IMG/VR virus record: IMGVR_UViG_3300028394_002328
Location: 248,001-312,000 of that record
DNA length: 64,000 nucleotides
Strand: one strand, 5' to 3'
Shown here: one piece after another, positions 2,826 through 36,520 of the stretch
Numbering within the stretch: position 1 is the stretch's first letter
How the letters are laid out: each line of letters starts with the position of its first letter
Program-made: the position numbers and the translations under genes
Notes under the pieces: generated by a model
Seen by the model: only the letters and a program-made list of their open reading frames with translations
Databases searched by the model: none
What the model was told of the DNA's origin: nothing

Positions 2826-3142
2826 TGCTAGCAATGCAGGAATTGACAGTTTGGGATGGTAGTGTCCATCCCAATCATACTTATCTGTTTGACGGTGATA
2901 AGGCTGTTGCTTACATCAAGCAAGGTGAGACAACTCCTTTTTATTTTCAAAACCCGCTACGCATTGACAAGCGTGGGCGTAAATTTATTGCTCTTAAAAC
3001 AAACCCTTTTAAGGTTATTAAAAGTAGCCTAATTGAAGTTGTTGGTAGCAAGGGTGATAAGTACTATGTTGACCCTGATGCTAAAACTTGCACATGCCAA
3101 GGATTTAACTTCAGAGGCAATTGTAAACACATTAAACTATAA
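2825..3142 (+). CDS. SWIM zinc-finger protein
   Basis: C-terminal [15 protein letters not shown]. Confidence 0.75.
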
Positions 3143-27648: not shown

Positions 27649-27708
27649 CTAGTATTTATGCAATGCGGCAATATCATATCTACAATGGCGTTGTATAAAT
27701 AACAATAT

Positions 27709-33123: not shown

Positions 33124-33209
33124 TGGTGGAGTGTACTGGGATCGAACCAGTCGTGCCATAAAGACGGCGGATTTACAGTCCACTGCATCACCATTGATGC
33201 TTCCACTCC
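33124..33209 (-). tRNA. tRNA-Tyr (GTA)
   Basis: Long variable arm, CCA. Confidence 0.92.
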
Positions 33210-33275
33210 ATATTGAAACACACTTTTTAGTTCTTTCGACCTCTCCGCGTTCGGTAAAGGTAATGTGTTTTAATA

Positions 33276-34597: not shown

Positions 34598-35158
34598 CTA
34601 ACTCAATAAAATTCTACTATGTTTTGGTAATCCTGCTCTTAAATAATCCATCTGATCAGCCAAAATATTACGATTTTGTAATATCATATTTTCAAAATGG
34701 TTTGGCACATATGGAACATATAGTAGTTCCATTCTTGCCTCTTTAAGAGTTTTACACCCTTTCATAGCGTTACAATCTTTACATGCGGTAACTACATTCA
34801 TCCATACATTTTCCCCACCTTTGCTTTTGGGGATAATATGGTCTCTGCTTAGGCTGTTAACATTGGGAAAATAATCACCACAATATGCACAGATATGTCT
34901 ATCTCTACCAAACAATGTTCTATTGCCTAGTGCTACTTTACTATGCTTAGTTGGATTAAATCCATGTCCTTTGATAGCAATAATTGATTGAGTTTCAATG
35001 TAACTTAGTTCGCCATTGCGTTGAATTCCACCACGATATTTAGCCACAATTTCACCCATAGTCCATGCAACACTTTTGGTTGCATGGTAAAGAATTGCGT
35101 TATCATATGAAATCCACTGTCGGGGCGTTCCCGATATATCCAGTGCTAAAACTGACAT
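34598..35158 (-). CDS. HNH endonuclease (McrA-like, betaproteobacterial type)
   Basis: RDRHICAYCG, RDHIIPKSKGG, NVVTACKDCN. Confidence 0.9.
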   Translation of the reverse strand: MSVLALDISGTPRQWISYDNAILYHATKSVAWTMGEIVAKYRGGIQRNGELSYIETQSIIAIKGHGFNPTKHSKVALGNRTLFGRDRHICAYCGDYFPNVNSLSRDHIIPKSKGGENVWMNVVTACKDCNAMKGCKTLKEARMELLYVPYVPNHFENMILQNRNILADQMDYLRAGLPKHSRILLS

Positions 35159-35262: not shown

Positions 35263-35451
35263 TTAGCGCATACTATCAAGTTTACTTTCTGGTATTTTTT
35301 TAAGAGAATCTTTGCGAACCAAACAATCTCTTTGAGTACCATATTTAAACACACGCAAATATTCAATGCCATCAATCAACCTAATGTCGTTAGGGTTCTT
35401 GCATGAATATTTTTCTTTATTAACTAAATTTTCAAAATATGTTGTTTTCAT
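35263..35451 (-). CDS. small hypothetical protein
   Basis: AAGGAG SD. Confidence 0.7.
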   Translation of the reverse strand: MKTTYFENLVNKEKYSCKNPNDIRLIDGIEYLRVFKYGTQRDCLVRKDSLKKIPESKLDSMR

Positions 35452-35658
35452 GATTACTCCTTAATATGAACACTCTGGGGCCTCGCCTTACCAGGGCAAG
35501 CCTATGTCCGTCCCAAAGTGTGTAGTAAAACATACTACATGTAATATGCTTTACTACTCGGTATTTTTCAAGCCACATTAGGCTTTTCATCCACCGCGCC
35601 GCCCGTTTCTCCGATTTATAGTGCGGAGTAGGTCCTCGTTACCTTACACTGTCTTTCA

Positions 35659-35687
35659 ATTGTATCTCAATCTTCCTTTTCTGTCAA
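35659..35687 (-). promoter_or_regulatory. sigma70-type promoter at the head of the tRNA region
   Basis: TTGACA-17-TACAAT. Confidence 0.85.
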
Positions 35688-35691
35688 CCAT

Positions 35692-35718
35692 AAAAAAACC
35701 TCGGAATATTCCGAGGTT
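35692..35718 (-). terminator. intrinsic terminator (attenuator)
   Basis: AACCTCGGA-ATAT-TCCGAGGTT followed by a U-tract. Confidence 0.88.
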
Positions 35719-35741
35719 CTGATAATTCGTATGTTTACTTG

Positions 35742-35837
35742 TTATCCAAACCTCGGAGTAGCCCTTCTATCAGATGTGGGATAGGCTGTCTCCAATGACC
35801 ATGATTTAATATAGGTTGATAAGAAACAAGTTTTCAT
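35742..35837 (-). CDS. putative leader peptide, 31 aa (not in ORF track)
   Basis: MKTCFLSTYIKSWSLETAYPTSDRRATPRFG*; TAAATA 5 nt upstream; 3' end overlaps the antiterminator arm. Confidence 0.7.
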   Translation of the reverse strand: MKTCFLSTYIKSWSLETAYPTSDRRATPRFG

Positions 35838-35871
35838 AAAGCTATTTATCCCTAATTATTATTTTAAATAA

Positions 35872-36474: not shown

Positions 36475-36520
36475 ATACTATATTTAATATATGAGCTAGG
36501 TTTAATAATATAAATATTGT

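What the first reader, a model, noticed from the sequence alone, without database searches (positions are those of the whole stretch)
35692..35848. Leader-peptide transcription attenuator at the head of a phage tRNA region
Seen on the minus strand, in order: a TAAATA late-type motif (35843-35848); ATG 5 nt later; a 31-codon ORF, MKTCFLSTYIKSWSLETAYPTSDRRATPRFG* (35837-35742); then a perfect intrinsic terminator (AACCTCGGA-ATAT-TCCGAGGTT plus U-tract). The last codons and stop of the ORF (UCCGAGGUUUGGAUAA) pair with UUAUCAGAACCUCGGA, which contains the terminator's 5' arm. This gives a 16-position antiterminator with one mismatch, mutually exclusive with the terminator. Established: this is the logic of ribosome-mediated attenuation (trp/his/pheST leaders); completed translation permits termination and stalling permits read-through. 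Unusual: the leader is not enriched for one amino acid. It samples many, using AT-rich codons (TTA, TCA x3, ACA x2, AGA-AGG, AGG, GGA) largely matched by downstream phage tRNAs. Inference: a general translation-stress sensor that turns on late tRNA supply when tRNAs are depleted or cleaved, on top of a sigma70 promoter just past the terminator. I know of no described phage equivalent.
Basis: partly seen in the sequence, partly recalled or inferred. Interest (0 to 1): 0.9.

Follow-up and report, generated by a model that had tools for sequence, protein, structure and literature searches.

The report
Short-ORF terminator switch heading phage tRNA genes
A tiny conserved open reading frame, whose last codons can pair with one arm of the terminator behind it, sits in front of the tRNA gene block of several uncultured giant aquatic phages, and it most likely lets a translating ribosome decide whether transcription stops there.

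Summary

I found eight further copies in four lineages, 70% identical or less. All nine share these features:
- a TAAATA motif a few bases before the ATG;
- an open frame of 31-47 codons, in which every indel is a multiple of three;
- a stop codon inside or next to arm A;
- a 21-26 nt gap to arm B;
- an intrinsic terminator.

The closing pair of the terminator covaries. In two lineages the terminator helix has a different sequence, and arm A has changed with it. Every copy lies at the 5' head of a tRNA array. One lineage has sigma70 promoters only upstream of the ORF.

- The leader codons match the phage tRNAs no better than average genes do (65% against 64%).
- There is no run of regulatory codons, only scattered invariant residues.
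- In three close relatives the antiterminator is weak.
- The window has a consensus promoter just past the terminator.

Best reading: a ribosome-gated terminator, a new variant of leader-peptide attenuation, confidence about 0.5. What it senses is unknown.

The parts
35842..35849 (-). ATAAATAG, a T4-late-type promoter motif (NATAAATA) that ends 5 nt before the ATG
   Evidence: The motif is invariant in the 7 close copies while the upstream flank cannot be aligned. L191 and L194 carry CTAAATA 7-8 nt before the ATG. ATAAATA lies within 40 nt upstream of 15 of 54 ORF starts, out of 33 copies in the window, and those upstream stretches make up 1.4% of the sequence space. The radical-SAM gene 24089-23052 has the same geometry of ATAAATAG, 4 nt, then ATG. 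NATAAATA is the late promoter reported for T4-like cyanophages (PMC2984593).
35742..35837 (-). 31-codon ORF with no Shine-Dalgarno sequence, probably the start of a leaderless transcript
   Evidence: The frame is open in all 9 copies, and the other two frames carry 1-5 stops. After column shuffling, P(all 7 stop-free) = 0.005. Every indel inside the ORF is a multiple of 3, while those outside are 1 and 8 nt. A profile HMM of the peptides recovered a 58-aa called protein at E = 3e-4 among 1.8 billion proteins. dN/dS is 0.5-1.0 with no excess of third-position changes.
35742..35757 (-). Arm A, the 5' strand of the antiterminator: the last four sense codons plus TAA
   Evidence: Shown. In all 9 copies the core of A lies 6-16 nt before the end of the stop codon.
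35726..35741 (-). Loop of the A:B hairpin
   Evidence: ATAACAAGTAAA, which overlaps the stop codon, is invariant in the 7 close copies and partly kept in L194.
35710..35725 (-). Arm B, shared by the antiterminator (3' strand) and the terminator (5' arm)
   Evidence: Shown.
35692..35720 (-). Intrinsic terminator: 11-bp hairpin, 4-nt loop and U7 tract (35698-35692)
   Evidence: Found by the scan and folds at -15.9 kcal/mol. 98.6% of cells are paired across 7 copies, and the pair next to the GC core is A-U in 3, C-G in 3 and U-A in 1. L191 and L194 carry a different helix (CCCTGGGA with TCTCAGGG) at the same place.
35659..35687 (-). Sigma70-type promoter TTGACA-17-TACAAT directly after the terminator (context)
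   Evidence: It scores 11 of 12. The -35 hexamer is invariant and the -10 nearly so (TACAAT, or TATAAT in L018 and L028), while the spacer varies across relatives. L194 has one and L191 has none.
35452..35645 (-). Structured GC-rich RNA (RNA2) that leads into ORF62 (35451-35263) and the tRNA region (34573-22988): the unit that read-through would enter
   Evidence: It folds with z = -4.1, and the consensus fold buries ORF62's Shine-Dalgarno sequence. It is 92-94% identical in relatives. It has no Rfam match.

Best explanation
This is a ribosome-gated intrinsic terminator. It is a three-segment form of leader-peptide attenuation placed at the 5' head of the phage's tRNA region.

Proposed sequence of events:
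1. A late-type promoter (NATAAATA) starts transcription at or within a few bases of the AUG, so the 31-codon ORF is translated as a leaderless or nearly leaderless message.
2. As the RNA emerges, the ORF's last codons and stop codon (A) pair with B. This hairpin is the more stable one in the window, and it withholds B from the terminator.
3. A ribosome that reaches the end of the ORF in step with the polymerase occupies A. B then pairs with C, the terminator forms, and a transcript of about 145 nt is released.
4. If the ribosome is absent, late or stalled before about codon 21, A:B persists. The polymerase then reads on into the structured RNA, ORF62 and the tRNA genes.

Shown: the sequence anatomy, its conservation, the maintained frame, and the covariation in the terminator.
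Inferred: the transcription start, translation itself, and the direction of the switch.
Unknown: the signal. The conserved residues (K, C, Y, SW, L, YP, R) fit a sequence-specific nascent-peptide effect, or a second role for the peptide, at least as well as they fit general codon sampling.
For: Nine copies in four lineages (window, L002 and L005; L009, L018, L028 and L035; L191; L194) keep the same order and spacing. The stop-to-B gap is 21-26 nt and the core of A ends 6-9 nt before the end of the stop codon.

The frame is preserved:
- Column-shuffle P = 0.005 for the 7 close copies.
- About six indels inside the ORF are all multiples of 3.
- A serine position switches between TCT and AGT, in the window and L191.
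- The peptide HMM hits at E = 3e-4.

The terminator covaries: one pair takes three forms, A-U, C-G and U-A, in 7 of 7 copies.

The antiterminator is maintained:
- L009 has compensatory changes that give a perfect 16-bp A:B helix.
- L191 and L194 have replaced the terminator helix (CCCUGGG-type), and arm A has become CCCGGGG, which pairs with it.
- In folds of the nascent RNA, B pairs with the ORF's end in 9 of 9 copies. Shuffle P is <0.0025 to 0.07 per copy.

Masking A as a ribosome at the stop codon would gives the terminator as the minimum-energy fold.

The element has its own promoter. The upstream neighbour is divergent in L028 and L191.

The promoter motif is 32-fold enriched before gene starts. 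Seven genes, this ORF among them, have the geometry with 4-8 nt and no Shine-Dalgarno sequence.

The element is always upstream of all tRNA genes in its locus.

In L191 three near-consensus sigma70 promoters precede the ORF and none lies between the terminator and the tRNA genes. There the terminator must be passed for tRNA expression.
Against: - There are no transcription or translation data, and the host is unknown.
- No Shine-Dalgarno sequence is present. Leaderless initiation is inferred only from T4 promoter geometry, which I take from memory.
- dN/dS is 0.5-1.0 and there is no third-position excess. The coding signal therefore rests on frame maintenance and on islands of identity.
- In L018, L035 and L028 the A:B hairpin is only -7 to -11 kcal/mol, against -18 to -19 for the terminator. 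When B changed, C followed but A did not. In L191 and L194 the terminator also wins at equilibrium.
- In the window-type phages and L194 a consensus sigma70 promoter follows the terminator, so regulation would matter only when that promoter is off.
- There is no run of regulatory codons, and the codon match to phage tRNAs is average.
- Only about four independent lineages exist, and 2-3 of 14 other hairpins in the window also find upstream partners in nascent-RNA folds.
Confidence: 0.5

Rival explanations
1. It is a stand-alone late micro-gene. The 31-47-aa peptide is the product, for example a small host-takeover or anti-defence protein, and the terminator simply ends this tiny transcription unit and insulates the early tRNA unit behind it. 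The A:B pairing would be secondary: mRNA stability, or control of the gene's own termination or translation.
For: - The unit has its own promoter motif and its own terminator, and a separate sigma70 promoter for the downstream unit in 8 of 9 copies.
- Islands of the peptide are conserved across deep divergence (M.N.TC, W, YPT[ST], [RK]G).
- One serine position uses both codon families.
- The antiterminator is weak in three copies.
Against: - dN/dS of 0.5-1.0 is high for a functional protein.
- In the window clade and L009 the untranslated RNA would mask its own terminator.
- Arm A tracked a complete replacement of the terminator helix.
- L191 has no promoter after the terminator.
- The element keeps its position at the head of tRNA arrays although upstream genes differ.
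Confidence: 0.22
2. The antiterminator is operated by a trans-acting factor rather than by the ribosome. A phage or host RNA-binding protein, or an RNA, would bind the conserved loop and stem of the A:B hairpin and stabilise it, as the BglG/LicT-RAT and PyrR systems do. The ORF would be incidental or auxiliary.
For: - The loop sequence ATAACAAGTAAA is invariant in seven copies while the stem positions next to it vary.
- In copies with a weak A:B hairpin, some stabiliser would be needed for any read-through.
Against: - It does not explain the maintained frame, the in-frame indels or the fixed position of the stop codon.
- The loop is not conserved in L191.
- There is no match to any Rfam cis-regulatory family.
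- No candidate binding protein was identified.
Confidence: 0.12
3. It is a non-coding small RNA of about 145 nt, or merely a strong constitutive terminator whose upstream complement is a relic. The open frame would then be tolerated by chance.
For: - No Shine-Dalgarno sequence is present.
- Substitutions are spread evenly over codon positions.
- The region is strongly structured (z = -3.96 in the window and -7.08 in L191).
- Frame +1 is also nearly open in five copies.
Against: - Frame 0 is open in 9 of 9 copies, and all indels inside it are in frame.
- The start and stop positions are conserved.
- The peptide-level HMM finds a hit.
- A relic would not have followed the replacement of the terminator helix.
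Confidence: 0.1

Closest known systems
Ribosome-mediated transcription attenuators of amino-acid operons (trpL, hisL, pheL, thrL, leuL, ilvL; pheM of pheST)
   Same: A short translated leader ORF is followed by an intrinsic terminator, and a mutually exclusive antiterminator shares the terminator's 5' arm. A ribosome at the end of the ORF favours termination, and a lagging ribosome favours read-through.
   Different: - It has three segments rather than four, so no 1:2 pairing enforces termination when translation is absent.
- It has no run of regulatory codons.
- The peptide has conserved residues.
- It probably starts leaderless from a phage late-type promoter.
- The downstream cargo is an RNA and a tRNA array, not biosynthetic enzymes.
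- The host is a phage genome.
- The Rfam His_leader model scores 21.5 bits against a threshold of 49, and only on the terminator.
rnTrpL / peTrpL of Sinorhizobium meliloti (PMC6614838)
   Same: The RNA released at the attenuator and its small leader peptide can have functions of their own. This would reconcile conserved peptide residues with an attenuator role.
   Different: That system controls a trp operon through Trp codons. No trans function has been tested here.
Leader ORFs with sequence-specific nascent-peptide or proline-codon sensing (tnaC, ermCL, mgtL/mgtP; PMC3641672 for mgtCBR)
   Same: The conserved residues of the leader peptide, not a codon run, determine where the ribosome pauses, and that selects between RNA structures.
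   Different: - tnaC acts through Rho.
- erm leaders act on translation.
- No arrest motif has been recognised here, and no ligand is known.
T-box leaders
   Same: A terminator/antiterminator switch that couples tRNA status to transcription. This is an analogy of function only.
   Different: T-box leaders bind tRNA directly, contain no ORF and have conserved T-box sequence. Rfam finds no match here.
T4-type late promoters (TATAAATA; NATAAATA in T4-like cyanophages, PMC2984593)
   Same: The same 8-mer consensus lies immediately upstream of genes, and early and late promoters are combined around one unit.
   Different: Late-transcription proteins (gp55, gp33, gp45) were not looked for in this contig. 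Many motifs lie only 4-8 nt from the ATG.

Membership tests
Leader-peptide (ribosome-mediated) transcription attenuator | Short ORF in the leader that is translated | tested here: inconclusive
   The frame is open in 9 of 9 copies, column-shuffle P = 0.005, all indels are in frame, and the peptide HMM hits. Against this, there is no Shine-Dalgarno sequence and dN/dS is 0.5-1.0. Translation itself cannot be tested here.
Leader-peptide (ribosome-mediated) transcription attenuator | Intrinsic terminator between the leader ORF and the regulated genes | tested here: met
   Searches show it. A covarying pair is present in 7 of 7 copies. It is present in all 9 copies.
Leader-peptide (ribosome-mediated) transcription attenuator | Antiterminator that shares a strand with the terminator | tested here: met
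   The pairing covers 16 positions with 1 mismatch. It is stronger than the terminator in 4 of 9 copies and weaker in 5 of 9. It forms in the nascent-RNA fold in 9 of 9 copies. A tracks B after the helix was replaced.
Leader-peptide (ribosome-mediated) transcription attenuator | Ribosome position on the ORF overlaps the antiterminator's 5' strand | tested here: met
   The core of A lies 6-16 nt before the end of the stop codon, and the stop-to-B gap is 21-26 nt, in 9 of 9 copies. Masking A yields the terminator.
Leader-peptide (ribosome-mediated) transcription attenuator | Run of regulatory codons for the sensed amino acid | tested here: not met
   No amino acid is enriched. The invariant residues are M, K, C, Y, S, W, L, Y, P and R. 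The match to phage tRNAs is 65% against a genome average of 64%.
Leader-peptide (ribosome-mediated) transcription attenuator | The promoter lies only upstream, so the regulated genes depend on read-through | tested here: inconclusive
   This is met in L191, which has three sigma70 promoters upstream and none downstream. It is not met in the window-type copies or in L194, where a consensus sigma70 promoter follows the terminator.
Leader-peptide (ribosome-mediated) transcription attenuator | Read-through responds to translation of the leader | not testable with these tools
   This needs reporter assays or coupled in-vitro assays.
Rfam leader families (His_leader, Trp_leader and similar) | Score above the family's gathering threshold | tested here: not met
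   His_leader scores 21.5 bits against 49, and MicX 25.5 against 75. Both hits rest on the terminator stem only.
T4-type late promoter | NATAAATA motif positioned before genes and enriched there | tested here: met
   15 of the 33 copies lie within 40 nt upstream of 54 starts. The motif is invariant in the 7 close copies.
T4-type late promoter | Late sigma and co-activator (gp55/gp33/gp45-like) encoded by the phage, and a mapped start site | not tested
   Only a 64-kb window of a 335-kb contig was examined, and no transcript data are available.

The most novel reading that the evidence does not exclude
The element is a feedback sensor of translational capacity. Late in infection the host sigma70 promoters fall silent. 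Transcription of the phage's structured RNA and of its array of about 19-22 tRNA genes then depends on read-through from the late promoter, and read-through rises whenever ribosomes lag on the leaderless micro-ORF. Ribosomes could lag because charged tRNA is depleted, because an anticodon nuclease has attacked, or because of a peptide-specific arrest. tRNA supply would thus be matched to demand.
Probability: 0.22. Interest if true: 0.8.

Novelty: new variant of a known kind. Interest (0 to 1): 0.62.

Why it matters
Phage tRNA arrays are common, and they are increasingly seen as counter-measures to host codon bias and to tRNA-targeting defences. How their expression is controlled is largely unknown. 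A conserved, ribosome-operated terminator at the head of such arrays would be a first example of leader-peptide attenuation in a phage, and of attenuation that governs tRNA genes. It would also use an unusual leaderless, three-segment design. In four full-text searches I found no description of such an element. The L191 version carries ordinary sigma70 promoters, so it can be tested directly in laboratory E. coli.

Tried and rejected
- Rfam, on a 20-kb stretch and on the 521-nt region with permissive thresholds, gave only sub-threshold hits on the terminator stem.
- INPHARED phage genomes gave no match by blastn or tblastn.
- PHROGs and Pfam found no family for the micro-ORF (PHROGs only), ORF200 or ORF62.
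- Relatives found through the upstream gene ORF200: 8 proteins and 80 metagenome loci. The close ones end at contig edges, and the distant ones (25-48% identity) lack the element.
- Relatives found through ORF62: 72 proteins, which sit in tRNA arrays next to an HNH gene but lack the element.
- A 3'-UTR of the upstream gene: rejected, because the upstream neighbour is divergent in L028 and L191.
- A chance ORF: rejected.
- A type I toxin: rejected, because the peptide is hydrophilic and has no membrane segment (reading).
- A degenerate tRNA: rejected, because there is no T-arm and ARAGORN calls nothing there.
- Codon matching to phage tRNAs: no better than average.
- A pattern scan on the conserved loop returned mostly chance loci and no new copy.
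- The scan of representative bacterial and archaeal genomes gave two chance hits, so there is no clue to the host.
- The word-index protein search refuses queries under 40 aa. The peptide alignment was too variable for a back-translated scan. A search with P0083 found only itself.

Full report
**What is there.** Reading the minus strand, the window holds these features in order:
- the end of a 200-aa ORF (36474-35872);
- ATAAATAG (35849-35842);
- an ATG 5 nt after TAAATA;
- a 31-codon ORF (35837-35742);
- a 16-nt loop;
- arm B (35725-35710);
- a terminator hairpin with a U7 tract (35720-35692);
- a TTGACA-17-TACAAT promoter (35687-35659).

The ORF's last 16 nt, including the TAA, pair with arm B over 16 positions with one mismatch. 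Arm B contains the terminator's 5' arm. The A:B hairpin folds at -21.8 kcal/mol and the terminator at -15.9. Masking A plus 10 nt, as a terminating ribosome would, makes the terminator the minimum-energy fold. The region folds better than shuffles (z = -3.96).

**Surroundings.** GC content rises from about 0.28 to 0.41-0.48 across 35450-35800. After the sigma70 promoter comes a structured RNA of about 190 nt. It has z = -4.1 and no Rfam match, and its closing helix buries the Shine-Dalgarno sequence of a 62-aa ORF. An HNH gene follows, then the tRNA region: 18 genes called by ARAGORN, plus a tRNA-Tyr that it missed. All tRNA genes lie downstream of the element. The window comes from a 335-kb IMG/VR contig. 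It has no relative among deposited phage genomes. A PstS-like gene suggests an aquatic phage of cyanophage style.

**Relatives.** Two near-identical copies (L002, L005) told little, because the arms were identical. A 17-mer taken from the downstream RNA happened to fetch four contigs: L009, L018, L028 and L035. In these the downstream RNA is 92-94% identical but the element only 69-72%. A profile HMM of the seven peptides, run against 1.8 billion proteins, found a 58-aa called protein at E = 3e-4. Its loci (L189-L193) carry a much more diverged copy. A degenerate pattern built on the N-terminal codons then found L194, in a 352-kb contig. That makes nine copies in four lineages.

**The ORF.**
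- Frame 0 is open in all nine copies, and the other frames carry 1-5 stops.
- Shuffling alignment columns leaves all seven close copies free of stops in 0.5% of trials.
- Indels inside the ORF are 6, 3, about 21, about 18, 3 and 3 nt long. The indels just outside it are 1 and 8 nt.
- M, C, W, L, Y and P are invariant in all eight aligned peptides (L194 was not in that alignment). Islands such as TCN, WSLET and YPT[ST][DN] recur across the deepest split, and one serine uses TCT in the window but AGT in L191.
- Against this, dN/dS is 0.5-1.0 and changes are spread evenly over codon positions.

I conclude that the frame is selected, which means translation, and that most of the peptide sequence is not. 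That is what one expects of a regulatory leader, with a few residues that matter for a reason still unknown.

**Start signal.** ATAAATAG is invariant in the seven close copies although the DNA upstream cannot be aligned. L191 and L194 have CTAAATA 7-8 nt from the ATG. In the window, 15 of the 33 ATAAATA copies lie within 40 nt upstream of 54 ORF starts, which is 1.4% of the sequence space. The spacing is bimodal:
- at 17-33 nt there is room for a Shine-Dalgarno sequence;
- at 4-8 nt there is none; seven genes are of this kind, including a radical-SAM gene with the same geometry as the micro-ORF.

NATAAATA is the late promoter reported for T4-like cyanophages (PMC2984593). With T4 geometry, which I take from memory, transcription would begin on the A of the ATG. 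That would give a leaderless message and would explain the missing Shine-Dalgarno sequence. This step is inference.

**The two helices.**
- *Terminator.* 98.6% of cells are paired, and the pair next to the GC core is A-U, C-G or U-A, matched in 7 of 7 copies.
- *Antiterminator.* 86.7% of cells are paired. L009 carries compensatory changes that make a perfect 16-bp helix. L018, L035 and L028 have 3-4 central mismatches. At the shared B position, C followed the change but A did not.
- *Energies.* A:B is -21 to -23 kcal/mol against -15 to -16 for the terminator in the window clade and L009. A:B is -7 to -11 against -18 to -19 in the L018 group.
- *L191 and L194.* The terminator helix has a different sequence (CCCUGGGA with UCUCAGGG). 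The ORF's end now reads CCCGGGG, which pairs with the new 5' arm.
- *Nascent RNA.* In folds of the RNA as it exists before the 3' arm is made, B pairs with the ORF's last 30 nt in 9 of 9 copies. Per-copy shuffle P values run from below 0.0025 to 0.07.
- *Geometry.* The core of A ends 6-9 nt before the end of the stop codon, and the stop-to-B gap is 21-26 nt, in all nine copies.
- *Control.* Among 15 terminator-like hairpins in the window this one ranks first. However, 2-3 of the others also find upstream partners, so the nascent-fold criterion alone is not strong.

**Position and promoters.** The element is not a 3' UTR, because its upstream neighbour is divergent in L028 and in L191. Upstream genes differ between lineages, whereas the downstream side is always the structured RNA followed by a tRNA array. 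In L194 that array has 22 genes, all downstream. Eight copies have a sigma70 promoter right after the terminator; its hexamers are kept (the -35 exactly, the -10 with one change in two copies) while the spacer varies. L191 instead has three near-consensus sigma70 promoters in front of the ORF and none after the terminator. In L191, therefore, tRNA transcription must pass the terminator.

**Interpretation.** The simplest mechanism that uses every conserved part is a ribosome-gated terminator. Translation to the stop codon frees B and terminates transcription. A missing or lagging ribosome leaves A:B in place and allows read-through. This is the logic of trp and his attenuation, reduced to three segments.

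It differs from the known family in five ways:
- it has no codon run;
- it has conserved peptide residues;
- it probably starts leaderless from a late promoter;
- its cargo is a tRNA array;
- it sits in a phage.

65% of the leader codons are decodable, against 64% genome-wide.

The weak antiterminators of the L018 group and the promoter placed after the terminator are real difficulties. They keep my confidence near 0.5. The rivals are a stand-alone micro-gene, factor-mediated antitermination through the conserved loop, and a non-coding RNA or plain terminator. I weigh each in its own section.

**Novelty.** Four full-text searches found no description of leader-peptide attenuation in a phage or in front of tRNA genes. 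That library is incomplete, so this is absence of evidence only. I rate the element a new variant of a known kind.

Noticed in passing
window 35452-35645 (-); L009:3083-3277; L018:4806-5001; L035:1507-1703 (-); L191 about 1800-2050; L194 about 9310-9060 (-): An unannotated structured RNA of about 190 nt lies between the terminator/promoter and the tRNA array. It has z = -4.1, and it forms a multi-stem junction whose closing helix ACUCC:GGAGU hides the Shine-Dalgarno sequence of the next ORF. It is 92-94% identical among relatives whose neighbouring element is only about 70% identical. A diverged core with a covarying hairpin is present in L191 and L194. Rfam has no match.
   Followed up: partly
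window, 15 sites, e.g. 24101-24094 (-), 27694-27701 (+), 36509-36516 (+), 43xxx, 48xxx: ATAAATA is 32-fold enriched within 40 nt upstream of ORF starts. In seven genes it lies only 4-8 nt from the ATG with no Shine-Dalgarno sequence, which suggests that leaderless late mRNAs are common in this phage.
   Followed up: partly
window 33127-33210 (-): A tRNA-Tyr (anticodon GTA, long variable arm, CCA end) was missed by ARAGORN and flagged only as a weak tRNA-Sec-like Rfam hit.
   Followed up: yes
window 35263-35451 and 34598-35158 (-); L043-L051: The 62-aa ORF has at least 72 homologues at 60-97% identity in aquatic metagenomes. It usually sits directly next to a 186-aa HNH endonuclease and inside tRNA arrays, which looks like a mobile cassette.
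   Followed up: partly
between window 35263 and 35158; L002:5209-5285: A tRNA-Arg(TCG) gene lies between ORF62 and the HNH gene in L002, L009, L018, L028 and L035. It is absent from the window, and in L005 a nucleoside-phosphorylase-family gene stands in its place.
   Followed up: no
L191:1341-1520: Three tandem near-consensus sigma70 promoters (10-11 of 12 matches), spaced about 70-85 nt apart, lie in front of this lineage's copy of the micro-ORF.
   Followed up: no
window 2900-2939 (+): A second terminator-like hairpin has a 5' arm that finds an upstream partner (12 of 13 residues) in a nascent-RNA fold.
   Followed up: no
window 35688-35852 against 35452-35652, compared with L009, L018, L028 and L035: Identity jumps from about 70% to about 93% at the terminator/promoter boundary. 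This suggests a recombination junction or very different constraints on the two sides.
   Followed up: no
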